Shown here piece after piece: positions 4,442-44,030 of a stretch of 64,000 bases of DNA. The translations under genes were made by a program, and so were the position numbers. The DNA comes from Felis catus (lineage: Eukaryota). Below the pieces are notes generated by a model, which saw only the letters and a list, made by a program, of their open reading frames with translations, did not search any database and was not told the origin of the DNA. Positions within the stretch are counted from its first letter, which is position 1; every line of letters starts with the position of its first letter. Where the stretch lies: the NCBI RefSeq assembly GCF_018350175.1, contig NC_058369.1, forward strand, positions 372,001 through 436,000, written 5' to 3'.

Positions 4442-7186
<2,745 letters not shown>

Positions 7187-9092: not shown

Positions 9093-10962
9093 ATGACCGC
9101 CTGCCTGGTGCACCTGGTGACGCTGGTCCTCCTGGGCGCAGCCGCGTGTGGTGAGTGACAGGGCCTGGGCCTACCGGGACAGCTGGGAGCCACCTGTCTG
9201 GAGGGCGGTCAGCCGCCCCCCCCCCCTGCCATCAGGCAGCAGTGTCCCCGGCTCCAGCAGGTGAATGGAAAGCTCTGAAAAGGAAGGATTTTCCCCAAAC
9301 TTCGAATATGAAGCCTGAGCTCTCACAGTCCAAGCTCAGCCTCCAGTGAGGGTCAAGTTGTTGGTGCAAACGGCCGGGACTGCTGGGTCTGGTCAGCCAC
9401 ACTTAGCGAATTTGCCCCAGAATCCCCTGCTCCCAGTGGGCCCGGACTGGACTCCAGGCCTGCCCCCCCCCCCCCGACCAGACTCCAGGCTGGGTACCCC
9501 CCCACTGGACTGGACTCCAGGCCTGCCCCCCCCTCCGACCGGACTCCAGGCCTGGGCCCCCCCCCCCCACCTGACTGGACTCCAGGCCTGCCTCCCCCCA
9601 CCGGACTGGACTCCAGGCCTGCCCCCACCCTCCTCACCGGACTTGACTCCAGGCCTGGGCTGCCCGAGGGCCGGGTGGGGCAGGGAGGCCCGCCCCCTGA
9701 AGCACACACCTGCCCTCCCTCCCCCAGCGGCGCAGCCCCGGGGGCGAATCCTGGGCGGCCGCGAGGCCGAGTCCCACGCGCGGCCCTACATGGCGTCGGT
9801 GCAGGTCAACGGCAAGCACGTGTGCGGCGGCTTCCTGGTGTCCGAGCGGTGGGTGCTGAGCGCGGCGCACTGCGTGGAGGACTTGTGAGTGTCCGGAGCC
9901 AGCGGGGGGCTGGGGGGGGGCTGGGAAGGGGGGGACGCGGCTCTCATGTGGACCCCCCCACGCCCAGGGCCGACGGGAAGCTGCAGGTGCTCCTGGGCGC
10001 ACACTCCCTGTCGCAGCCCGAGCCCTCCAAGCGCCTGTACGACGTGCTCCGCGCAGTGCCCCACCCAGACAGCCGGCCCGACACAATCGACCACGACCTC
10101 CTCCTGCTGCAGGTCTGCCGAGCCCAGCCTCAGTCCCGCCTGCTGCACGCGACCCCCGCTGCCCCGCCGCCCGCCCTGACCCCCCGCTCCCGCCCCTTCC
10201 CGTAGCTGTCGGAGAAGGCCGAGCTGGGCCCCGCCGTGCAGCCCCTGGCCTGGCAGCGCTTGGACCGCGACGTGGCGGCCGGCACGCTCTGCGACGTGGC
10301 CGGCTGGGGCGTGGTCACCCACACGGGCCGCCGGCCGGACCGCCTGCAGCAATTGCAACTGCGGGTCCTCGACCGCGCCACCTGCAACCACCGCACGTAC
10401 CACGACGGCACCATCACCCAGAGCATGATGTGCGGGGAGAGCAACCGCCGGGACACCTGCAAGGTGGGGGGGGGGCGGGGCGGGGGGGGCGGGGGGAGCA
10501 ACCGCTGGGACACCTGCAAGGTGGGGGGGCGGGCGGGGGGGGGCGGGGGGAGCAACCGCTGGGACACCTGCAAGGTGGGGGGGGCGGGCGGAGCAACCGC
10601 CGGGACACCTGCAAGGTGGGGGGGGCGGGCGGGGGGTGCGGGGGGAGCAACCGCCGGGACACCTGCAAGGGGGGGGGTGCGGGGGTTGGGGTGCGGGGAG
10701 ATTAACCGCTGGGACACCTGCAAGGTGCGCGGGCGGGGGTCCCTGCAGGCGCGGCTGCAGCGCTCACGGCCCGGCCCGGCCCGCCGTCCTGTCCCCGCAG
10801 GGCGACTCCGGGGGCCCGCTGGTGTGCGGGGGCGTGGCCGAGGCCGTGGTCACGTCGGGCTCGCGCGTGTGCGGCAACCGCAAGAAGCCCGGCATCTACA
10901 CGCGCCTGGCGAGCTACGTGGCCTGGATCGACGGCGTGATGGCCGAGGGCGCGGCCGCTTGA
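9093..10962 (+). CDS. CFD: Complement factor D (adipsin); join(9093..9150,9728..9884,9968..10112,10206..10463,10801..10962), 259 aa
   Basis: Signal peptide ...LVLLGAAAC, propeptide AAQPRGR, mature N-terminus [17 protein letters not shown]. Triad in SAAHC, DHDLLL and GDSGGP; S1 Asp in RDTCK; factor-D self-inhibitory loop TSGSR. GT-AG junctions, total 780 nt. Confidence 0.96.
9441..9660. repeat. Minisatellite in CFD intron 1
   Basis: About 7 copies of GGACT(GGACT)CCAGGCCTG followed by a C-run, unit about 30 bp. Confidence 0.88.
10439..10730 (+). repeat. Six-copy tandem repeat of the CFD exon 4 3' end plus splice donor
   Basis: AACCGC(C/T)GGGACACCTGCAAG ends at 10463, 10520, 10574, 10615, 10669 and 10724, separated by G-rich spacers. 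Five of the six copies are followed by GT. Confidence 0.93.
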
Positions 10963-14885: not shown

Positions 14886-17791
14886 TCAGGGGTAGCTGAG
14901 GGGCACCCGCCGCCAGAGCCCCCCGCACAGGCAGTTCTTGATCCAGCGCTGTTCCCACTGCTTGACGGCCGTAGTCTTATTGGGTGACCTGAGCATGGTG
15001 ACGCAGCCACACCTGGGGGCAGAGCCGGCAGGGTGAGGCGCAGGGGTGGGGGGGTGGGGGGCCTGCCCTCCGCCCTGCCACTGGGCCTCTGCACGTGCTG
15101 CACCCCCACCGCCAGAGCACCGTTCCCGGAGCCGCCCGACACCGAGCTGGCTCCGCCACACCTCTGCGTCCCGGCTCAGCCCCGTGAGTGGCCACGGGTG
15201 TGGGGTTTGTGAGTCCCGGCCTGGCCGCTCCCCGGCAGCGTGACCCTGAGCGCCAGAACCTGCTCCCGGTCCCGGGGTTGTGTGGCGGCAAGTGGGGCTG
15301 CGTCTGCAAAGCGCCGGCCTTCGTTTCCGCACCCGCCGGGTGACGGAGAGCTCCCCCGGGGCAGGCTCGGGCTGCGGGCACAGCTCGCCACCGATGCCCC
15401 AGGAGAGGGTGCTCAGGAACCCCCAAGGCGGCCGCGGCCCTCGCTGGGAGGCGCTCCCACGACCCGTGTTCACAGGCAGGGAGACAGGCTCGTGGCGGGA
15501 AGCCACCGGCCCCGGGACAGGGCTGAGGGCGGGTCCGCGCGGCGGGCGCTCACCGGGTACAGGCCTTGCACTCCTCCGTGGGGTAGGCTCCCAGGTGCAG
15601 CCTTCGCAGGTGGTCGATCTTGGGCTGGCCCGGCGCCCTGGCGGACGAGAGGGGACACGTGAGGCACGCACACACCAGACACAGGTCATCTCTGACGCGT
15701 GCCCTCTGCCCGCACACTCAACGGCGCCGGAAAGCTCTGGAAGCCACCGAGACCCGCGGGGAGGGGCCGAGAACTGCGTTTGAATGTTTCCAAAACAACG
15801 CATTTTAAATCTCCTCTTCTCTTAAAGTTTTTCCCGAAACCCAAACCCAAATGAGTCAGGCGGTCCCTCCCACGGCAACACAAGAAGGAAGCTGCCAGAA
15901 GGGGGCGGGCTCAATGCCCGAAGCATCACACCCAAAGGGGGCCCCCGGGTTCTGACTTTCCTCCTTTGGCTCATCTGCGATTTCTGAAATTTCCACCCAA
16001 AGTAATGGACCTCGCAGAGGATTCGCGGGTCTCTCTTCACCACGTGACCGTCCAAAACGGGGAAGCACCTTGTGCGACCTGGGGTCAGTGACCACACCTT
16101 TCTCGCCTGAAAAGTGGGGACAAACCCCTGCCCCGTGGTGCTGCTGCGCAGCGAGGGCTCACACGGGAGTCTACACTAGGGTGACTGCCCCCTTACGGGG
16201 GCAGAGGCCGCAGACCGGGTCCTCAAGGTCAAGCACACGGCACTCCACGCAGGGGTGACACGCCAGGCGGAGGGCAGGACACGGCCGAGCGCAAAGACGG
16301 AGAAAGGCGGCGGGGGAGTCGGGGACGAGCGGGGCGTCTCTCGGGGACAGCGTTCAGGCGGAGCCCCGAAGGCGGCACCAGCAGGGCGCACGCGGAGGGG
16401 GCGAGGCGGAGCCGGGCACACACCTGCTGAGGCCGTCGGGCTGCACGGTGGCGCAGGCAGGCAGGGCGGGGGCCTTGCCGAACTGCAGGCGCAGCGGCTG
16501 CTTGGGCTGCAGGCGGCTGACGAGGCCGTCGCTGACGGGCAGCCAGTCCAGGCTGGGAATGAGCAGCTGGCTGGGCAGCAGGCAGCACTCGTCGACGAGC
16601 GCCTCGTCCGGCTCACTCGTGGGGCCCTCGTCACGGCCTGCGGGGAGGGGACCGTGGGGGCGTCGCGCTGGGCGGCCCTGCCCGGAGCGCTGCCTGCCGG
16701 GGGCGGGGCACCGAGGCCTCCTTGGAGCTCGGAGCAGCGGTCCCGGGCTCAGGCCCCAGCTCTACCCTGACCTCCCGAGCGTCAGGACCCACTTATTCGT
16801 TTAACAAGTACACAGGGAGCGCTGGGTGTCCTTCCGAGAACAGGGCCTGCCGCAAACACGCGACCCGGTGACACAAGACAAGCAAACGGGCGCAGACGTT
16901 TAGCGAGCACCTGTGCTGGGCACTGGGGACCACGACCGTTTAAGCTGGGGGAGCCTGTATTTGGGGAGTGGGGCGTCTCAGCCAGGACTCGTATTTTGAT
17001 GGGGGACGAGAGCCGAGGGCTGGCGTCTTACAGCAGATCCAGAGCTTGGTGAGCAGGCGGAAGAGCAGGGACATGCTGTCTTGGGTGTCTGAGGTGGCCG
17101 TGTACACGGGCAGGCAGCTGGGCTTTAGCAGGCCCCAGATCCGGATGACGACCATCAGCTCCCGCAGCATGCCCAGCGAGGTGCCGTCCCGCAGGAAGCT
17201 GTGTCCCGGCCGCAGCGGGGAGCCCTGTGGGGGAGGCACCCGGGCCACAGGCCTAAGCGCGTGCAGCATCCTAGGACCCCGGTGTGCGGGGAGATGGGCC
17301 GGCTTCCCTCGCACAGGCCGGGGGAGCCCCGGGCACCGGCCCCCGGCTTTTCTGACGCGCAAGGGACGGACGGCCCCGGCTCCTGGACGCCACGCAGTGC
17401 CAGCAGGGGACGGGAAGCGGTCCCCCCTGGCAGGTGATGCGTGCGGGGGTGGGGACGCAGCCCGCTGGCTCTGGCAGCAGCGCAGCCGGGACCATGGAGG
17501 CGGCCTGGGGGGAGGCGCCGCACCTGGTTGGGCAGACTGGCCAGCAAGTAGAGCACGAAGTCGCCCACCCACTGCAGGAGCTGCTGGAGCGCCTGCAGCG
17601 TGTTCATGTCCAGGACGAACTCTTCCGTCTTGAGGTTGATCATGACCTTGTCGATGTCTGGGAGGAGACGGGAGGTCAGGCGCCCCCCGGCCTCACGGTG
17701 CACGCACCCGGGGGCCGCGCCGACGCCCGGCAGCACCCACTGCGAGAGCCGGGCCCTGGGTCAGAGCGGCTCCTCTCCGGCCCCGGCCCCG

Positions 17792-17827
<36 letters not shown>

Positions 17828-20800
17828 CCTGGCCCGACCGATGCTCCCCTGGGGCGAGCCCGGTGAGGGCCGGGGCAGCACCCACCGGCATCCGTGATCT
17901 TGGCGCAGACCTCGGTCAGCCGGTCGCCGGGGCTCTTGTCGGGCGTGTTGAGGAAGTGTGGGCGCAGGAGGGACTTGAGCGTGGAGCTGACGGCCACGAG
18001 GAAGAGCTTGGCGTGGTAGTCGCACACGCGGGCCACCGTGCAGGGCGACAGCTTGCACAGCGAGGCCTTCATGGCCAGGATCCGGGTGGACAGGACCTGG
18101 GCGGGCAGGTGGCGTGAGCGGGCGGCCCCCGAGGGGCCCTCCCCCGTGGGGCGGGGCGGCAAGTGTGAGGGGCGGGGCAAGGCGGCAAGTGCGAGGGGCG
18201 GGGCAAGGCGGCAAGTGCGAGGGGCGGGGCGAGGGGCGGGGCGCCCTCCCCCCCCCCCCCTCCCCGCCTCCAAAGAGGCCCTCCACCTGCTGCAGGGCCG
18301 CGTTCTGGCGCGTGTACTCCTCGTGCAGCCTCTCCACCAGGCTCTGCACCATGGCGGGCTGCACGTGCAGGAGGGTGTCCCACCAGTCGTAGCCGGTCAC
18401 CATGCAGTACTCCAGCAGGAAGAGCAAGTGCCGCAGGGCCAGGCTCACGTCCAGCGCGTGGCCCATGGAGGGCGAGATGCGGAGCATGCTCAGCTGCAGG
18501 GGAGGGCGGGGTGGGGAGCGCTGCGGGACCCCGCACCCCCTCCCCGGGCCGTCCCGCCTGCCAGGGGGTGGGGAGGCCGCACGCGCTGTGTCTGCGCTGC
18601 GGCGGCACCTCCGAGGCCCCACCACACCCGCACGGGGCTTCTCGGGGACCGGCCTGTCACCAGGCTGCGTGGCCGGCGCGGATCCACTCGAGGGCCGCGG
18701 GGGTCTCCGCAGAGACACAGACCCTGTTCTCCGGAAGCGGAACGCCTCACGCCAGGCCGGGCCCGTCTCCTGGAGACCCCAAGGGCGGAGCAAAGGAGCA
18801 AGGGATTCGCTCACGAGTCAGGAGTCGCAACGTGAATGCAGAAGCCGGTTTCCCAGTCAGCACGGGAGGCGGGGGGGGGGGATGGGCGGGCACGGCCACA
18901 GGGTGAGCGCACACAGCTCGCCCCTTCCTCCAGGCCCCCTTCCTCCAGGCCGAGGCCAAGTCCCCTCCGGGAACAAGGACACCCGCTGAGCACCCACTAC
19001 GCTTACTCGCTTCACCGCGCTTGATTCCAGAAATCCTACCTGAACAGCAACCACCCCAACGGCTCCTGCTGAGCACCTACTAGGCGCCACGGACCACGCC
19101 GGAGCTTTGATTAGACCTCAGAGGCGACGGCCTCGGGCCGGCGAGCAGCAGGGAGGCGGCTCTGAAGCTTACCTTCCCGTGGTTGTCGATGCCGACCAGG
19201 GCCAGAGACGTCCAGGAGAGCTGCATGGCCTTGAAGTGGACGGCGGGGCCGGTGGTCCGCGGGCGCTTGATGGCCGGCTCGTCCGCGGAGCGCGGGGCCG
19301 CAGAACTGTAGAAGACGGCCATGCTCTGCAGCGACAGCCGGTGCACGATGTGGACGCTGCCGTCGTGAAAGGCCAGGGCCAGCCCTATAGGCCAGAGCAC
19401 AGGCGGCTCAGCCGCGTGGGGGCCCGCCCAGCTCCCCACGGTGGGAAGGGACCGCCCAGGGGAGAGGCGTGGCCCCAGGCCGCCCACAGCCCACCAGCCG
19501 TCCCCCACAGCCAGCCGCTTTCCCCGCATCCTTTGCCAACAGCCCCAGGTTCGGGCTACGCCCCACCTCCTCCCCGAGGTGTGGCTGATGGGAGCAAATG
19601 GGTTCCTTCCAGGGAGACGGTGGGAAGGGACGGTGAATGCAAAGGTCCCGGGGCCCAGGAGCACACAGGGGCCTCGAGGGGAGGATGGGGGGTGGGGAGG
19701 CCTAACCCCCACGACCAGTGGGCGGCAGGGTTAGGGCTCACGTTGAGTCCTGACTCACTTGAGGTCAGGGACACCTGCAACTGAGCCCAGGACCGACACC
19801 TGAGGCGCCATAACAGAGCGCTGCCTACCTAAAAAGTCCGCCCCAAGTTCCCAACCTCTTCCTTATTGGTCACTAACAGCCCTTTATGCACGCAGTGTTC
19901 CGTTAGCCAGTCTCACGGCCCGGGAGCGTGTGGGATCCCGGAAGCGGGGCCACCTGGCGGACAGGGGCGGGCCCCATGGCCCTAAGACTTGAGCCCCGGG
20001 CTCAGAGCCCACCGCCCCCAGGGGCTCGCGCCAGCTGTACCGAGGCCGGGGTAGAACTGGGTGTCGCTGGCCACCTTCAGGTCAGTGTTGGTGAGCGAGA
20101 TGGGCAGCTTAGGCAGCGCCACGGCAGACACGCGGTCCAGGTCGTTGGTGGCCGACAGGATCCGCCACTTGAGAATCATGGGCTGTTTGTCACCAACTGA
20201 AAAGGGGGCCGGGGGAACGGGAAAACAACAACAGAATGAGAAATGCCACACGGCGGACCCCCGCCGGGGACGCCAGGCACGGCCGCCCCAGCACCCCCGT
20301 CTCCGGCCCTGCGCTGGGAACCCGGCCCCGCTCCGCCCTCGAAGCACTCCATAGCCCAGGCAGCGGAACGGTCCACGGCAGGCACGTGACACACGTGGGC
20401 CACCAGTCCTGCCCCGGGACCTCGCCCGACCAGGAGGCCACAGGCAGTGGGAGGGAGGCCGCCGTGACCCTGGCTGAAGCCGGAGCAGAGAAGCGGGGTG
20501 CACCCCACTCCCGGCCACCACAAGCCCTGGCGACACAGCCAGCTCGCAGTGCGTCTTCTCGTGACAGGACAGGTCCGGGGCGAAGCCCAGCTCGGCCCGC
20601 CTGCTAAGGCTTGAGCTGGACGGTCGAGGGGCCACAGATCCGCGCCCCCTGCACCCACACCCCCCAGCAACAGGCAGAGTGGCTTCCGGGAGTCCCGGCG
20701 TGGCTAGAGGGCGCAAGAGGAGACACAGGGTGGATTTGCCGGGACGTGCCTGGGCAGGCAAGCCCGCGGGGACACGTGGCCACGGGGGGCGATCAGCACG

Positions 20801-23800
20801 GCCCACGCTGCCGGAAGGTGACGGCAGGCACACAAACCAGGTAGGAGCGGCGGAGGCGGTGCCCCCCCCCCCCCCCGCCCCGAGCCGCGCGGGGCCACGG
20901 CTGTGAGCCAAGTCGAGCTGGTTGTTACACGGCACAACCAACCGTCAAACAGCGTCTCCCAGCCGCCCACCTGTCTCGAGCGCTCGGCTCTGAACGGCTT
21001 GTCACAGCTCATAAACCTGCCGCAGACCCGAGCCCCCCAGGGGAAACTGAGGCCCAGGGGGCACTGAGACTGCCCGAGGCCAGAGTGCAATTTCGCATCT
21101 AACAAGGATGACGTCCAGACAGCACCCGCGGGCCGGTGGTCACACCGAGCACTGCACAAATGCTACGCGATGGCTGTGGCCAGGCTGGCCCTGGGGCTGG
21201 TCACCCACTGCACTGGGGCATAGGGACCGTGCAGACCTGTGTGGCCCTGCCCGCCACACACGGTCATGCCGGCCGCCAGCTACGAGCTCACTCGGGACGC
21301 GGGGTCCGGGGAAGGTGCTCATGCTAACCACTGGGCCCCTGCAGCGGGCAGCTTCTGTAACCACCCCGTGGCCCCCGTGGGGGGGCAGGAGCCGCGGGGC
21401 CTCTTGACGTGGCTTCATCGGTAGTTCCCGCTTAGCACCCTCCCGAGCAGACAACCGCTCCAGGGTCCATTAGCGCTAATCAGCAGAGAGCCCTGCTCTC
21501 ATCAGCTGCAAATGCTATTTGTGGGCCCCGGGGGGCCTTCATCCCCTCTGAGCTCCAGCGGTGAAAATCAAGTGGCTTTTCCGACTTCGCAGTCATTAAA
21601 GGCTGGGCCAGCACGTCCCGAGCTCTGTCGGGGAGCGGGCACGGTCTTCAGGGAGGCTGGCACCATCTGGAGCCACCGGGGGCTCCACATTGAGTGCAGG
21701 GACAGGGGAGGGGGAGGTGAGCCATTGGGTCCGTCCTGGGGAAACTCCGTCACCCCCTCTGGGTCTGTTTCCTCACCGTAAACCAGGGTTTCTGGAGGGT
21801 TCTGTTTTTAGGATTAGGTGCCCTCTGTGGCCCAGGGGACTGTGTGTACCCCCAGCCCTGCCGCACCGCCTGCTTGCTCCCCTTTGCTCAGCCCGCTCTA
21901 GCTCCTGCCTCATGCCCCAGGACCTTTGCACCACAGCTCCCTCAAGCAGGCACATGCTCCCCGCAGGAGGTGTGAGAGTGAGGCAGTCAGGCGACCCGCC
22001 TGTGGGATGACCGGGTAGGACCTCGCCTCTCTGAGCCCCGGGTCAGGTGGCTGTCTGGGACAGGAGCGAAGAGGCTGCGTCGGCAGGGGTGAAGAGGGTG
22101 GGGCAGGCTGACACGGCCTGGCTGCTCGGAGCAGCTCCCTCACGCTGCCCCGGGAACGGGGAGACTCACCCACAGGCGAGATCTGCTGGAAGACGTTGTT
22201 CACGGGAAGCCCCTCCTTCCGCAGAGACCAACATTCCACGATGCTGCTCGTCTGGCTGGACGCACACAGGAGCACCTGCGGAGGCGGCCGCTGGTCCGGA
22301 GTGTGGAGCCGGAATGGCAGATTTCCCCCAGGGGAGAGCAAGGGGGAAGCTTCACGAAGCCGGGGCCTTACACTGGAACCCGGGGTGACCGCTGGACAAC
22401 TGCCCCAGAGACGTCCCCGTCCTGGTCCCGGGACCCGCAGGCTGTGGGGCCCGGCGTCCTCACGAGGTCCCCACGAGGGTGGGGCAAAGGGTCAGAGGCA
22501 GAGAGCCGGGTGGACCCCACGCTGCTGGCCGTGAGGATGAGGAGGGGCCGCGAACCCAGGACGGGGCGCCTCGGGAAGCCAGAAGAGGGGGACACAGGGC
22601 TCCCTGGGGCCCCGGGGGGGGGTGTTAGCCCCACGTCCGACCCCGGACCCCAGAACTCGCGGGGAGGAGCGTGCGGCCAGGGGAGCGGGCCCGGGGCCGG
22701 ACTCACCTGCTCTGACATGTCACGGGCCAGGAACTTGAGGTGGGTGATGGCGGGGAACTTGTCCTTGCGGTTGAGGTCGGTGGTGCAGCGCATGAACAGC
22801 GAGGGCAGGATCTCGGTGTCGATGCGGCACTTCTCGCTGACCACGCTCACACACACCTTGTAGAACTGCACGGGGGAGGCGCTGCTGCCGTCCGCGGTGG
22901 CCACCACGATGTTGCCGCCGCCCGTGAAGGCGATGTCCGCCAGGGCCACGCGGCCACGCAGCCGGCACAGACTCTCCGTTGACGTCAGCACCTGCCCGCT
23001 GGGCTTGAGCAGGGACACGGTGACCAGGCCGCTGACCGTCACTGCGATCCAGCCCTCCATTGGCTTGCCGCCGAATAGCGTGAGGGACGGCGAGAATTTG
23101 ACGCGGGAGAACTTCTCGCCAAAGCTGGAGGCGCCCGACTGTGGGGGGAGAAGGGAGCACGGGGTCTGCTTACTGCCGATGCTGGACCCAGCTGAGGACG
23201 TCAGCAACAGATGGCCTGCCCAGACTTTAGGGGTCTGCCCTTTGTGACCTGACAACCCCCCCTTGGGGTGTAGAAAGAGGAATTCTGGGGTGCACTGGAT
23301 TCTGAGAACAGCTGTCAGTTAAATGAACAGTTCACTGAGGATACCAGCCACCAGCTGAATGGAAGGTTCATTAAGGACAGCAGCCATCAGTTAAATGGGG
23401 GCTCACAGAAAACACAGGTGCTGACAGCCTGATCGAAGGCATGAATCGGGCGAGTTGGGCCGGGACTACAAAAACCAAAGGGTGCTGGTGGCGGGAGAGG
23501 AGGAGCCAGATGGCGGGGGGACAGGCAGGGTGCACGGTCTCACCTACTGCAATGGCATCGGCTTGCTCGGGTGAACACCCACCTTTTCCACGTGCAATGC
23601 CAGCTTCACCCCATTGTGCAGCCAGGACAGCGCCACGATGGGGTCCCCCTCCACCAAGCTGCCCACAGAGCTCTCCCAGCTGTTGGCCAGGTGGTCGGCC
23701 ATGCTCCAGCACTTGATCTGCCCGTCGGCATCAGCCGACAGGAGCCGGGAGCCTGTGGACCACAAACCCACACTGCAAACCCTCAGGGTGCACAGGGGCA

Positions 23801-24965: not shown

Positions 24966-26279
24966 TGTGCCCACAGGCCACAGGTCACACCCCGAGGACA
25001 GTCACCAGCTCCTGGGGCTGGGGGGGGGGGCGGCGGAGACTGGCTCATCAGTGACATTCACTGAGTGCCTGCAGGATGCCGAGCTCCACACTGGACACCC
25101 GGTTCCCACAGGGAATGAAAGGAACCCAACCGATTCTCTACGATTCCCTGCCCTTGGGTCTCATGTGCTGTGTGATTGAAGCTGAATTTTAAACAGGGGG
25201 ACGGGGAGGTCTCATCAGGGAGACAACATCAAAGCAGAGGTGTGAGGGAGCGAGACACACGATGTCTGGGGGAAGGTGGAGGGGACAGCAAACGCAAAGG
25301 CCCAGAGGTCGGACGGAGCCTGGGGTGTTCAAGGAGTGGCCAAGCAGCCCAGGCAGCTAGAGCAGATGAGTGAAGGGAAAGGGGGCCAGAGGTGATGAGG
25401 GTGGGTGGTGGGGACGCTGGAGGCCTTCACCCTAGTGGGGTGGGGGGGGAGCCCGGGGAGGGCGATGAACTGTTTACATTTGCGCAGGACCCCTCGGGCG
25501 GGCTGGAGTGCACCACCAGGGGTGGGGCGGAGGGGAGTGCACTGGTCCCCGTAGGCAGCAATAAAGGCAGTGGGAAGCGCATGCAGAGGTCGGGCCTGGG
25601 TCCATCCTGGGGGAAGAGCTAGGAGACCCCATCCAGCGGAGGCAGAAAGTCGTGCCCGAGGCGGGACTTGCTGAGCCCAACAATGACAACGCTCTACGCG
25701 CAGGCACCGATTACAGGTTACTCCTTCTTTCACAGAAGTGCCATCAGCTCCCTTTCTCTGAGTCATGACCCCCAGGTCCCGCTACGTCTTCGAGCCCAGA
25801 CCAGGGACACCAAGGCCCCTCCCACAAGCCCCCCGCAAGTCTTTAAATTCTGCCCTCAAAGCCCCAGACCCCATCCCCTACAATCTTTCCTTTCCAGAAT
25901 CCCCTCCCAGTTTACCCCTTGAGCCCCGAGCCCGGCCTAAGCTCTCAGACTCCACCCCAGGGACCCCAAACCCTTCACCTGCCAGGTGTTCACGGGGCCC
26001 TCCTGGTCCCACCGCCAAATCCCCCATTATCCTCGAGCCTCACCCCCAGCCCGGGCCAGACCCCCAGTTAGTCCCCGGCTCCACGCAAGTTTCTGCCACA
26101 ACCCCCAGACCCCGCCCAGCGACCCCCGCCAGCCGCGCGCCCGGCGCCCTCTGACCCCGCAGGCCCCGCCCCGGGCCCACGGGTCCCCGCCTCCTCCGGG
26201 CTGCGTTCCCACCCTCCCCGGCCGCGGGCGCCGAGCGGACGCTGGCTGTCCCCTGCGGGCCCCGCAGCCCCGCGCTCAC

Positions 26280-26370
26280 CAGGCCGGCCCAGGCGCCAAG
26301 CCGAGCAGGCGGCCGCGGCCCCGAGTCTCTCTAGCTCCCCGGTTCCGGCGCCGCCATCTTCCCCGGGACC
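26280..26370 (-). other. MED16: MED16 non-coding exon 1 (5' end approximate)
   Basis: CTG|GTGAG donor at 26280/26279 inside a CpG island. Splices to the exon 2 acceptor at 25011. YY1-type AAGATGGCGG at 26360-26351. Confidence 0.75.
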
Positions 26371-26445
26371 AACGAGTCGCCCGCGCAGCGCGGCCGCTTC
26401 CCGGAGGCTTCTGGGACGGCGGCGACTCCGCCCCTCTTCCGGGAT

Positions 26446-26647
26446 ATTTGCATATGGGACTTTACAGCGTCCCAGCAGCCACCTGAGTTATATTTGGTGG
26501 AACAATGAACCACTTTTTCAGTTTCAGTGAGTGATCGCATTTGATCGCACTATATGTTGTAGGAATATAGGAGAAAGATGGATCGCTGACTCCTTTTAAA
26601 AGAATTCACCCTTTGTGTAAAGACATTTTCTTTGGGCACTATAAATA
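26446..26647 (+). promoter_or_regulatory. RNA Pol III type-3 (U6-class) snRNA promoter
   Basis: Octamer ATTTGCAT 26446-26453; SPH/ZNF143-like TTACAGCGTCCCAGCAGCC 26462-26480; PSE TCACCCTTTGTGTAAAGA 26606-26623; TATAAATA 26640-26647. Octamer-to-PSE spacing 160 nt and PSE-to-TATA spacer 16 nt match U6 promoter architecture. Confidence 0.85.
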
Positions 26648-26653
26648 TCCTTC

Positions 26654-26790
26654 NNNNNNNNNNNNNNNNNNNNNNNNNNNNNNNNNNNNNNNNNNNNNNN
26701 NNNNNNNNNNNNNNNNNNNNNNNNNNNNNNNNNNNNNNNNNNNNNNNNNNNNNNNNNNNNNNNNNNNNNNNNNNNNNNNNNNNNNNNNNN
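26654..26790. other. Assembly gap or masked segment (137 N)
   Basis: Run of n characters. Confidence 1.
26671..26777 (+). ncRNA. RNU6-9: Inferred U6 snRNA gene hidden in the N-gap (transcribed sequence not visible)
   Basis: Both PSE and TATA spacing put +1 at about 26671, and a 107-nt U6 fits wholly inside the gap. From memory, human RNU6-9 lies head-to-head about 300 bp upstream of MED16. Inference only. Confidence 0.6.
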
Positions 26791-27629
26791 GACTCTCCCG
26801 AGCGGGGAAACTGAGGCTCCACAGGTGAAGCGACTCTCCCTTTGGAGGCCCTTCCCCGGTTTTTAGGTCCTCCCGCGGGCTGCAGGGGAGGGCAGGAGGC
26901 TTCGGGCCGGGGCACCCCGCGGGCAGGGGGAAAGGGTCCTCGTGCAAGTGGCTGCACCCTCTGGGACCCCGGGCCTCCGGCGCCCATGCCAGCCACGTGG
27001 ACTTCCGCGATTTAGTGTCTGTCCTTAAAACTCTTAGGATGCCTGTTAAACGGGCCCCCGCACACCCAAGCGCCCAGACCTGGCCCGAGAGAAGGAACCA
27101 GGCTCCGTGCAGAAACACAAAGGCCTAGCTGGAGCATCCCGGGGCTCATGTATAAAAACCCCACAACGATGGGGGTGCCTCAGAGAGACCCAAGGCTGCG
27201 AGGGCCAAACCTGGACCGTGACCAGGATAAATAATACCGGATGGCCCATCGAACTAGAAAGTAAATCTTCATGTGTCCCCAATGGTTGCATAAGTGAACG
27301 CCTGGGGGAGAAGAGACAAATGTCCCTGCAGCATTCTCAATAATTAACATAGATCTTCTGTCCTCAGGGAGGTGGTTCCCAGCCCCCAGTCCTCTGTGTG
27401 GGGGGCACGCAGTAACGCCTTCCGGCCAGGATAGTGTGGCGGGGAAGGAGCTTCCCAGTGTGGAGCCCCACCAGCACTCCCAGCCGGGAGACCAGGGTCA
27501 ATGTCAGCAGTGAGGAGCCTCGTGGGCAGCGGGGCCCCCAATGTGATGGCACCAGCGAGACACTTCCCTCAGCGTCTGAACCCCCCGCTGGGTTCATCCT
27601 GCAGGACACTGGGCCAATCCCGGACACAC

Positions 27630-27865
27630 ACAGGGAGGCCACGTGAAGACGCAGGCAGGGGCTGGAATGAGGTGGCCACAGGCCAAGGAATGCCAGGGAC
27701 CCCCAGAAGCTCGGAAGAGGCAAGAAGGCCCCTCCCCTGCAGCTTCACAGCCCTGCCACAGGTTGGGTTTCGACTCCGGCTTCCAGGACTGGGAGACAAG
27801 AAATTCCTGTGGTTCTAAGCCACAGCTGGGGTACTTTGTCCTGGCCACCCCAGGACGATCACACA
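27630..27865 (+). mobile_element. MaLR LTR fragment (MLT1C/D-like)
   Basis: ggccacgtgaagac...ggccaaggaatgcc...ccagaagctcggaagaggcaag...aaattcctgtggttctaagccac...aca match MLT1 LTR 3' blocks. Confidence 0.8.
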
Positions 27866-28127
27866 AGTGACTTTTTGGACGGTGGGCAGCTGGGAAATGG
27901 TGGAGCTGGGGTTGGAACGTGGGCACCTGGGAAGGGCACGAGCCAGGCGGCAGAACCAGCGGCCTCTCCCTATACACCTCCTCAGTGTAAGGCTTCATCC
28001 CCAGGCCTTCGGCCCTCAGCGACTGAGACTCCACACATCCTGAGCACCTCTGTGCACCTGCCCCCCCCCCAGCCATACCCCCAAGGAAAGCCCCACAGCT
28101 GGAGACCAGAGACCAGAGCACCAGAAA

Positions 28128-28133
28128 TTTATT
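28128..28133 (-). terminator. R3HDM4 polyadenylation signal
   Basis: TTTATT on plus (AATAAA on minus), about 930 nt after the stop. Confidence 0.7.
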
Positions 28134-28163
28134 GAACTCTCCACTTTTCCCAAAGCACAACTA

Positions 28164-28164
<1 letters not shown>

Positions 28165-28204
<40 letters not shown>
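28165..28204. repeat. (AC)20 microsatellite in the R3HDM4 3' UTR
   Basis: Perfect dinucleotide run. Confidence 0.95.
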
Positions 28205-28206
<2 letters not shown>

Positions 28207-29066
28207 GAGGGGTCCCCCAGCCCTGCTCTTGTGGGACATGCCAGGGTGGCCAGTGAGAGGTCAGCCCAAGGCAACGGGCCAGAGCTAGGCTAGGGGAAGG
28301 GCAAAGGGACACGGACAGGGGAATGGGGCAGTCCTAGGGCAGAGGCTTCTGGCTGGAAGTCCTGATCCCGCAGGATGAAGGGAGGAGGTGTGTAGAGCAA
28401 ATGGGGCCCCAAGAGCCACCAAAAGCCACCCGTGGAGGACAAACATGTTCCAAAAGGGTGGCAAGACCAGCCTTTAAGATGCAGCCCCTGTCCTAGGGCG
28501 TGGGGCACACGCGCAGGCGCACACGACAGAACACACCTGGAAAAAGGGGCGGAGCCCCAGGCCCCCCCTCCCCCACATCCAAGCCAAAAGCTGGGGGATG
28601 GGGGAGGATCAAACAGGGACTGGAACAAAGTCCCCCGATTTATCAGTTGGGGCAAGTTTTTGGTTTTTCTTCCCAAAAGGGAAATTTAAAAATCTACAAC
28701 AAATCATGCCAAATTCATTAAAAGTGATAAAAACCCAGCCTGTCGCTCCTTGCTTAAGTTTCAGACGGGGCCGAAAAAGCTGAACGAAGAAGGAACACGG
28801 AAGTGACCAGGCCGGGTCTCCTCGCTCAAACTCAAGTCCCGGAGCGGGGAGCTGCAAGGCCAGGACAGTCCGGTGTGGGGGGCCAGGGCCTCGCGTTTAT
28901 CTGGGAGAGGCGGGCTGGGAAGGAGTCAGAGGGATAACCCCCCCCCCCAGGGGTAGAGCACGTCTGCAGGGACAAATCCTCCAAATAATAAAGATACTTT
29001 AGCGAATGGCACGGGAGGCCTGGGGGAAGGGAGGCTGGGGGCGGGGGAGGGGGAGGGGGGCGGCCA

Positions 29067-37777
<8,711 letters not shown>

Positions 37778-40509: not shown

Positions 40510-44030
<3,521 letters not shown>

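What the first reader, a model, noticed from the sequence alone, without database searches (positions are those of the whole stretch)
26446..26790. A U6-type snRNA gene appears to be hidden exactly inside the only N-gap
Seen: octamer (26446), SPH-like element (26462), PSE TCACCCTTTGTGTAAAGA (26606) and TATAAATA (26640) occur in the order and spacing of a Pol III type-3 promoter, and the sequence turns to N six bases after the TATA box. Known: in U6 promoters +1 lies about 65 nt after the PSE start and about 31 nt after the TATA start; both give about 26671. The gap leaves about 120 nt after +1, which fits U6 (about 107 nt plus T-run) but not 7SK, RMRP or RPPH1. From memory, human RNU6-9 is at this position next to MED16. 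Inference: a true transcribed U6 gene, not one of the many promoterless pseudogenes, is invisible to annotation here. The promoter could also serve as a species-matched U6 promoter for shRNA/sgRNA expression.
Basis: partly seen in the sequence, partly recalled or inferred. Interest (0 to 1): 0.75.

Follow-up and report, generated by a model that had tools for sequence, protein, structure and literature searches.

The report
Probable U6 gene under N-run
A complete, correctly spaced RNA polymerase III "U6-type" promoter sits beside the MED16 gene and points into the window's only run of N, so a U6 spliceosomal RNA gene very probably lies there; this is a known, ordinary locus, and it is probably hidden only because the letters were masked or left unassembled.

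Summary
On the + strand there is a perfect octamer (26446-26453), a proximal sequence element (PSE, 26606-26623) that keeps the main SNAPc contact bases, and the window's only TATAAATA (26640-26647). Their spacing matches published U6 promoters. The joint pattern occurs once in the window and never in 100 shuffles. Both PSE and TATA put the start site at about 26671, which is 17-18 nt inside the single N-run (26654-26790, 137 nt).

The surrounding gene order is CFD, MED16 (-), N-run, R3HDM4 (-), KISS1R (+). The same gene order is published for cattle. The MED16 CpG-island promoter lies back to back with the Pol III promoter.

The RNA itself could not be examined. So "U6" is a strong inference (about 0.75), resting on promoter type, the room available (about 120 nt against 107 nt for U6), synteny and the non-random position of the N-run.

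The claim that the gene is "invisible to annotation" is not supported. The N-run is probably a deliberate mask of human-identical sequence, or a gap caused by a multi-copy sequence. Promoters orthologous to human RNU6-9 have already been collected from the genome alignment of 241 mammals and assayed. The finding is ordinary and of low interest.

The parts
26280..26445 (-). 5' end of MED16: a TATA-less CpG-island Pol II promoter and a probable non-coding first exon. Minus-strand motifs are CCGGAAG (ETS/GABP-like, 26442-26436), GGGGCGG (Sp1-like, 26434-26428) and AAGATGGCGGC (YY1-like, 26360-26350). A candidate splice donor G|GTGAGC lies at 26280|26279.
   Evidence: Sequence read on the minus strand. 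GC is 0.76-0.80 and CpG observed/expected 0.82-1.01 at 26000-26399. MED16 exons lie downstream on the same strand. The motif names and the exon boundary are my inference, not tested.
26409..26416 (-). ZNF143/Staf-like core TCCCAGAA, upstream of the octamer
   Evidence: The core alone is not enriched in the window, so this is weak evidence.
26446..26453 (+). Perfect octamer ATTTGCAT (Oct-1/POU2F1 site) of the distal sequence element, at about -225 to -218 from the predicted start
   Evidence: 5 in the window against 0.32 expected. The position agrees with the published DSE range of -240 to -196.
26470..26477 (+). ZNF143/Staf (SPH)-like core TCCCAGCA, just downstream of the octamer
   Evidence: Only a partial match to the 18-nt site, so this is weak evidence.
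26454..26605 (+). AT-rich spacer of 152 bp between octamer and PSE, about one nucleosome in length
   Evidence: GC is 0.48 at 26400-26599 and 0.38 at 26600-26799, in a window that is 58-73% GC. The nucleosome reading comes from general knowledge of U6/7SK promoters and was not tested.
26606..26623 (+). Proximal sequence element (SNAPc site). With 26606 = -65 it keeps CC at -62/-61, T at -59, AA at -52/-51 and G at -49.
   Evidence: unique; 0 in shuffles. The contact positions come from the SNAPc-PSE structure paper PMC9652321.
26640..26647 (+). TATA box TATAAATA, 16 nt after the 18-nt PSE match. A TATA box after a PSE is what assigns a PSE promoter to Pol III.
   Evidence: unique in the window; 0.01 expected. 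The rule that PSE + TATA means Pol III is from PMC9652321.
26654..26790 (+). N-run of 137. It contains the predicted start site (26669-26671) and the whole predicted transcribed region (to about 26775-26777 for a 107-nt U6, terminator T-run included). The letters were not examined.
   Evidence: only N-run. The start site follows from buffalo U6 numbering, TATA -31..-24 and PSE -66..-46. U6 = 107 nt. The gene itself is inferred.
26860..26864 (+). First visible T-run (TTTTT) downstream of the N-run. It is a possible back-up Pol III terminator about 190-195 nt from the predicted start.
   Evidence: Its function is inferred only.

Best explanation
The stretch 26446-26653 is the upstream promoter of a small-RNA gene transcribed by RNA polymerase III (type 3). 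Oct-1, and probably ZNF143, bind the distal element at about -225. SNAPc binds the PSE at -65 to -47. TBP/BRF2/BDP1 bind the TATA box at -31. Pol III then starts at about 26669-26671 on the + strand, inside the N-run.

The gene under the N is most likely a U6 spliceosomal snRNA gene of 107 nt. It would be the carnivore (feline, by the run labels) counterpart of the MED16-adjacent human gene RNU6-9. It is arranged head to head with the MED16 CpG-island promoter, about 300 bp away.

The N-run is probably there because of what it covers. Either the sequence is identical to human and was masked on purpose, or it is a multi-copy sequence that broke the assembly.

Shown: the promoter elements, their spacing, their non-randomness and the flanking genes. 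Inferred: the start site, the identity of the RNA, its terminator, its activity and the reason for the N-run.
For: 1. Elements and spacing. The joint pattern gives 1 match against 0 in 100 shuffles.
2. PSE and TATA give the same +1 (26671) under published U6 numbering, TATA -31..-24 and PSE -66..-46. The PSE keeps the SNAPc contact bases named in PMC9652321.
3. PSE plus TATA specifies Pol III.
4. The N-run leaves 120 nt after +1, and U6 is 107 nt. Read as 107 + 2x15, the run's length gives +1 = 26669, within 2 nt of the promoter-based estimate (my arithmetic).
5. A 137-nt run placed at random in 64 kb would start in the 24 positions that fit between the TATA box and +1 with probability about 4e-4 (my arithmetic).
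6. Gene order: MED16 on the minus strand (Med16_N E 7e-32; PDB MED16 E 1e-90); an R3H-assoc exon on the minus strand and a five-exon KiSS-1 receptor on the plus strand (E 1e-65). The order CFD, MED16, R3HDM4, KISS1R is the same in cattle.
7. Human U6-9 is one of five active U6 genes with a complete DSE, PSE and TATA and lies close to the start site of an active protein-coding gene. RNU6-9 promoter orthologs were sought by lift-over across the 241-mammal alignment.
8. Other windows of this genome were noted to carry irregular, exactly sized N-blocks over conserved sequence. These are unchecked leads.
Against: No letter of the RNA was seen, so nothing directly shows U6. Rfam finds nothing in or beside the N-run.

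The true length of the N-run is only presumed exact. No T-run is visible until 26860-26864, so the terminator is also only assumed to lie under the N.

The SPH/ZNF143 match is weak.

The cattle gene list that does include 'U6' entries elsewhere shows none between MED16 and R3HDM4. The mammalian promoter screen found most non-primate RNU6-9 promoter orthologs weakly active. So activity in this species, and even universal presence of the gene at this locus, is not assured.

The human MED16/RNU6-9 adjacency rests on memory. No held paper names both.
Confidence: 0.75

Rival explanations
1. The promoter is real, but the RNA under the N-run is another SNAPc/BRF2-dependent small RNA of about 85-120 nt, such as a Y RNA, a vault RNA, tRNA-Sec, a U6 variant or an undescribed RNA.
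For: Type-3 promoters are shared by some fourteen Pol III gene types in human. Promoter anatomy alone does not name the product. Lengths of about 85-115 nt would also fit 120 nt (my knowledge of Y, vault and tRNA-Sec sizes).
Against: Synteny with the MED16-adjacent U6 locus (human position from memory). U6 is the type-3 product that is identical between mammals and multi-copy, which best explains a mask or gap exactly here. U6atac (126 nt), 7SK (about 332 nt), RMRP and RPPH1 are too long if the run's length is exact.
Confidence: 0.07
2. The N-run is an ordinary assembly gap whose true length is unknown. In that case the flanks may not be 137 nt apart and the size argument fails. The promoter may then drive a longer RNA, or a rearranged or decayed gene copy.
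For: The scan's program states that the length is only estimated. A T5 run at 26860-26864 could end a longer transcript.
Against: It is the only N-run in 64 kb of otherwise complete, very GC-rich sequence, it has an odd length, and it is placed to within a few bases over the predicted transcript. Gene order across it is intact. Notes from other windows describe N-blocks as exactly sized. A gap caused by a multi-copy sequence would itself point to U6.
Confidence: 0.13
3. The motifs are parts of the MED16 bidirectional Pol II promoter or a chance constellation. No Pol III gene is present.
For: Octamer, ZNF143, GABP and Sp1 sites are also common in CpG-island Pol II promoters. The Z-core is not enriched.
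Against: The PSE and the TATA box are each unique in the window and correctly spaced from each other and from the octamer. The 200-bp AT-rich island is foreign to the surrounding CpG island.
Confidence: 0.03

Closest known systems
Human RNU6-9 (U6-9), one of the five active human U6 snRNA genes
   Same: Complete gene-external promoter with DSE, PSE and TATA. Lies close to the start site of an active protein-coding gene. From memory, that gene is MED16, with R3HDM4 on the other side, which is the arrangement found here.
   Different: No sequence comparison was made, because human sequence and the N letters are barred. Non-primate orthologs of this promoter were mostly weak in a reporter screen, so activity here may be lower than in human.
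Characterised ungulate U6 promoters (buffalo, bovine, porcine)
   Same: Same element set and numbering. Buffalo has TATA -31..-24 and PSE -66..-46. Here the TATA and PSE starts both give +1 = 26671.
   Different: The buffalo octamer is at -203..-196 with SPH upstream of it. Here the octamer is at about -225 (closer to the human position described) and the better SPH-like core lies downstream of it. It is unknown whether those ungulate genes are orthologs of this locus.
Other type-3 Pol III genes (7SK, RPPH1, RMRP, U6atac, Y RNAs, tRNA-Sec)
   Same: Same promoter logic: Oct-1/ZNF143 enhancer, SNAPc on the PSE and BRF2-TFIIIB on the TATA box.
   Different: Product sizes do not fit 120 nt (7SK about 332 nt; U6atac 126 nt), or the genes sit at other conserved loci (my knowledge).

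Membership tests
Pol III type-3 (gene-external, SNAPc-dependent) promoter | PSE matching the SNAPc consensus at about -66 to -46 | tested here: met
   TCACCCTTTGTGTAAAGA at 26606-26623. 0 mismatches to the consensus pattern, unique, 0 in shuffles. It keeps CC -62/-61, T -59, AA -52/-51 and G -49.
Pol III type-3 (gene-external, SNAPc-dependent) promoter | TATA box at a fixed distance downstream of the PSE, which gives Pol III rather than Pol II specificity | tested here: met
   TATAAATA at 26640-26647, 34 nt after the PSE start. Buffalo U6 has PSE -66 and TATA -31, a difference of 35.
Pol III type-3 (gene-external, SNAPc-dependent) promoter | Distal sequence element with an octamer (and often a ZNF143 site) about 200-240 bp upstream | tested here: met
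   Perfect octamer at about -225. The ZNF143-like cores at 26409-26416 and 26470-26477 are only weak matches.
Pol III type-3 (gene-external, SNAPc-dependent) promoter | Occupancy by SNAPc, BRF2 and Pol III, and transcription from +1 | not testable with these tools
   No ChIP data.
U6 spliceosomal snRNA gene (Rfam RF00026) | U6 sequence and structure: 5' stem-loop, ACAGAGA box, AGC triad, internal stem-loop | not testable with these tools
   The predicted gene is entirely N (26654-26790), and the operators bar looking the letters up. Rfam finds nothing in the window or near the run at E up to 5. That says nothing either way.
U6 spliceosomal snRNA gene (Rfam RF00026) | Transcribed length about 107 nt ending in a T-run | tested here: inconclusive
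   120 nt are available after the predicted +1, which fits 107 nt. This holds only if the N-run keeps the true length. The T-run itself is not visible, and the first visible T5 is at 26860-26864.
Ortholog of human RNU6-9 | Position between the MED16 5' end and the R3HDM4 3' end, divergent from MED16 | tested here: inconclusive
   The window side is met: MED16 (-), R3HDM4 (-) and KISS1R (+), in the same order as cattle. The human side rests on memory plus 'protein-coding start site close to U6-9'. No held paper names both genes.

The most novel reading that the evidence does not exclude
The N-run hides not U6 but a previously undescribed SNAPc/BRF2-dependent small RNA of about 100 nt, conserved enough to be masked. 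It would be transcribed head to head with MED16 from a shared Oct-1/ZNF143/GABP control region.
Probability: 0.04. Interest if true: 0.5.

Novelty: already known. Interest (0 to 1): 0.12.

Why it matters
It matters little beyond housekeeping. If the reading is right, this is one of the few promoter-bearing, and therefore presumably expressed, U6 genes of this species, as opposed to the many promoterless retrocopies. It also shows the compact back-to-back arrangement of a Pol III snRNA promoter with the Pol II promoter of a Mediator subunit.

For the scan, the useful lesson is methodological. N-runs in this genome can sit exactly on conserved functional elements, so a 'gene hidden in a gap' probably reflects how the sequence was prepared rather than an annotation gap.

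The practical idea of a species-matched U6 promoter is standard. It needs the last ~17 promoter bases, which are also N. It is also tempered by published data that non-primate RNU6-9-type promoters are mostly weak.

Tried and rejected
1. Rfam gathering scan of the whole window and a permissive scan of 25000-29000 found no U6 or other relevant family. This is expected, because the candidate is all N.
2. Reads. The look-up of sequencing runs on the right flank found DNA runs of one organism and feline or gut metatranscriptomes. I then asked read laying for 26791-29900 only, to test whether an abundant RNA runs out of the N-run to the T5 at 26860. Nothing was laid, and no letters of 28667-28707 were sent to any tool afterwards. 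So there is no base-level continuity test and no expression test.
3. I did not lay reads across the N-run. I also did not open published tables of orthologous promoter sequences, because both would reveal letters under the N.
4. Paper searches for RNU6-9 together with MED16 found none. Domitrovich and Kunkel 2003 (PMC154217) is not held. The Nat Genet 2026 supplement is not held.
5. The Pfam scan of the first ten right-flank ORFs found nothing. ORFs picked by codon-position GC periodicity then gave R3H-assoc and 7tm_1.
6. The ARAGORN 'tRNA-Trp' at 27750-27834 is rejected as a gene. It is 85 nt long and has no Rfam tRNA match even at E up to 5.
7. The SPH claim was tested with the core pattern and is not enriched, so it is kept only as 'SPH-like'.

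Full report
**What is in the sequence**

- ATTTGCAT at 26446-26453.
- A PSE, TCACCCTTTGTGTAAAGA, at 26606-26623.
- TATAAATA at 26640-26647, followed by six bases and then N from 26654 to 26790.

A script confirms that this 137-N stretch is the only N-run in the 64 kb. It also shows that the promoter is an AT-rich island: GC is 0.48 at 26400-26599 and 0.38 at 26600-26799, in a window that is otherwise 58-73% GC.

**Is it more than chance?**

Yes.
- The octamer occurs 5 times in the window against 0.32 expected.
- The PSE consensus pattern matches once with no mismatch, against a mean of 0.00 in shuffles. The next-best site has 2 mismatches and lies elsewhere.
- TATAAATA is unique, against 0.01 expected.
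- The combined pattern octamer-N140-165-PSE-N12-20-TATA occurs once and never in 100 dinucleotide-preserving shuffles.

The 'SPH-like' element is the weak member of the set. Only the core TCCCAGCA (26470-26477) resembles a ZNF143/Staf site, and that core is not enriched (13 against 8.8 expected). A second copy on the minus strand (26409-26416) does lie on the other side of the octamer.

**Geometry**

Published numbering for a characterised U6 promoter (buffalo) is TATA -31 to -24, PSE -66 to -46 and octamer about -200. The human octamer lies 13-17 bp further upstream (PMC3958870). Applied here, the PSE (26606 = -65) and the TATA box (26640 = -31) both put +1 at 26671, and the octamer then sits at about -225.

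With that register the PSE keeps the bases that the SNAPc-PSE structure paper found to matter: CC at -62/-61, T at -59, AA at -52/-51 and G at -49. It differs only at tolerant positions (-60, -53, -48) (PMC9652321). A TATA box downstream of a PSE is what turns an snRNA promoter from Pol II to Pol III and recruits BRF2-TFIIIB.

The anatomy is therefore that of a type-3 Pol III promoter pointing rightwards into the N-run.

**Surroundings and continuity**

The program's note asked for continuity to be tested first. At base level this could not be done.

At gene level the flanks are in the expected order.
- To the left, on the minus strand: MED16 exons (Med16_N E 7e-32 at 22371-23255; Med16_bridge E 1e-15 at 17696-18814; PDB MED16 residues 147-294, E 1e-90). 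CFD lies further left, according to another note on this window.
- To the right: an R3H-associated N-terminal domain exon on the minus strand (32569-32991), which marks R3HDM4. Beyond it is a five-exon rhodopsin-type receptor on the plus strand at 40.3-44.0 kb. Its last exon matches the KiSS-1 receptor (residues 242-380, E 1e-65).

The order CFD, MED16, R3HDM4, KISS1R, ARID3A is the published order in cattle (PMC7655849). MED16 is also a conserved neighbour of Kissr-1 across vertebrates (PMC3502363). Frame is irrelevant here, because the run lies in intergenic DNA.

The minus strand just left of the octamer is a CpG island: GC 0.76-0.80 and CpG observed/expected 0.8-1.0 at 26000-26399. It carries ETS-like, Sp1-like and YY1-like motifs and a plausible first-exon splice donor at 26280|26279. 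This is the 5' end of MED16, about 300 bp from the predicted Pol III start and divergent from it. The motif names and the exon boundary are my inference.

**What lies under the N**

This is inference. The letters were not looked up. Four arguments point to U6.

1. **Room.** From 26671 to 26790 is 120 nt. U6 is 107 nt including its T-run and U6atac is 126 nt (PMC13484765). 7SK is about 332 nt. RMRP and RPPH1 are longer still (my knowledge).
2. **Placement.** A 137-nt run dropped at random into 64 kb would begin in the 24 positions between the TATA box and +1, and so cover the whole predicted gene, with probability about 4e-4. The run is therefore tied to what it covers. It also has over a thousand genomic copies, which would break a short-read assembly. 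The operators state that N-runs may be deliberate masks. First readers of other windows of this genome independently described irregular, exactly sized N-blocks over conserved elements. Those notes are unchecked leads.
3. **A numerical coincidence.** 137 = 107 + 2x15. With symmetric padding the gene would start at 26669, within 2 nt of the promoter-derived 26671.
4. **Locus.** Human U6-9 is one of five active U6 genes with a complete DSE, PSE and TATA, and a protein-coding start site lies close to it (PMC2082468). No held paper names both genes.

**Cautions**

- No U6 letter was seen. Rfam is silent, as it must be on N.
- The terminator is not visible. The first T-run after the N is TTTTT at 26860-26864, so a longer transcript cannot be excluded if the run's length is not exact.
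- In the cattle gene list that includes 'U6' entries elsewhere, none is listed between MED16 and R3HDM4.
- A large reporter screen of Pol III promoters lifted from the 241-mammal alignment found that RNU6-9 promoter orthologs from most species are weak, with strong activity arising in primates (bioRxiv 10.1101/2024.09.30.615957). The gene here may be only a minor contributor to U6 supply.

**Reads**

The look-up of sequencing runs on the right flank (26791-29900) found DNA runs of one organism. It also found metatranscriptomes labelled feline, gut or mammal that hold the stretch, which agrees with a felid origin. I then asked read laying for the right flank only, deliberately not across the N. 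The aim was to test whether an abundant RNA runs out of the N-run to the T5 at 26860. Later tandem-repeat scans were cut to avoid them.

**Comparison with what is known, and verdict**

This works like, and by its promoter is a member of, the type-3 Pol III promoter class. Membership of the U6 family proper could not be tested. Orthology to RNU6-9 is supported on the window's side by synteny. The promoter alone, taken from the visible letters, is ordinary.

The 'hidden gene' aspect probably reflects how this copy of the sequence was prepared. Public pipelines annotate U6 by covariance models wherever the letters are present (my knowledge). Orthologous RNU6-9 promoters have already been collected and assayed across mammals.

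My estimates are:
- about 0.75 that a U6 gene lies under the N;
- about 0.07 for another small type-3 RNA;
- about 0.13 for a true gap of other length, or a decayed copy;
- about 0.03 for no Pol III gene at all.

Novelty: already known. Interest: low (0.12).

Noticed in passing
window 26280-26480, minus strand: The MED16 CpG-island promoter and the Pol III promoter are back to back. ETS-like (26442-26436) and Sp1-like (26434-26428) motifs lie within 20 bp of the octamer, a YY1-like AAGATGGCGGC lies at 26360-26350, and two ZNF143-like cores flank the octamer. [quoted passage not shown]
   Followed up: partly
window 26800-26835: Just right of the N-run, the string GGGGAAACTGAGGCTC followed by CACAGGTGAAGCGACT resembles, from memory, the core of a MIR SINE. 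If so, an old repeat abuts or enters the right end of the N-run.
   Followed up: no
window 27750-27834: ARAGORN calls an 85-nt 'tRNA-Trp', but Rfam has no tRNA match there even at E up to 5. It is probably a false positive or a decayed tRNA-derived repeat.
   Followed up: partly
window 30743-31574: C-rich minisatellite of period about 40 (also read as 73, 78 or 110), about 20 copies at about 70% matches. It lies in the R3HDM4 region and causes the strong negative GC skew (-0.31) of 30-32 kb.
   Followed up: no
window 41209-41912: GC-rich minisatellite of period 32/63, about 11-22 copies at 80-84% matches, inside the first intron of the KiSS-1 receptor gene (exon positions).
   Followed up: no
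window 5135-5597, 9442-9658 and 10432-10727: Further G-rich minisatellites left of MED16. The one at 10432-10727 is the tandem amplification in CFD that another note on this window already describes.
   Followed up: no
window 28160-28203 and about 28125: A (CA)n microsatellite of about 22 units. Just before it is an AATAAA on the minus strand (about 28131-28126), which may be the polyadenylation signal of R3HDM4. That would put its 3' end about 1.3 kb from the N-run.
   Followed up: no
Nothing is concluded from this, and the letters were not used further.
   Followed up: no
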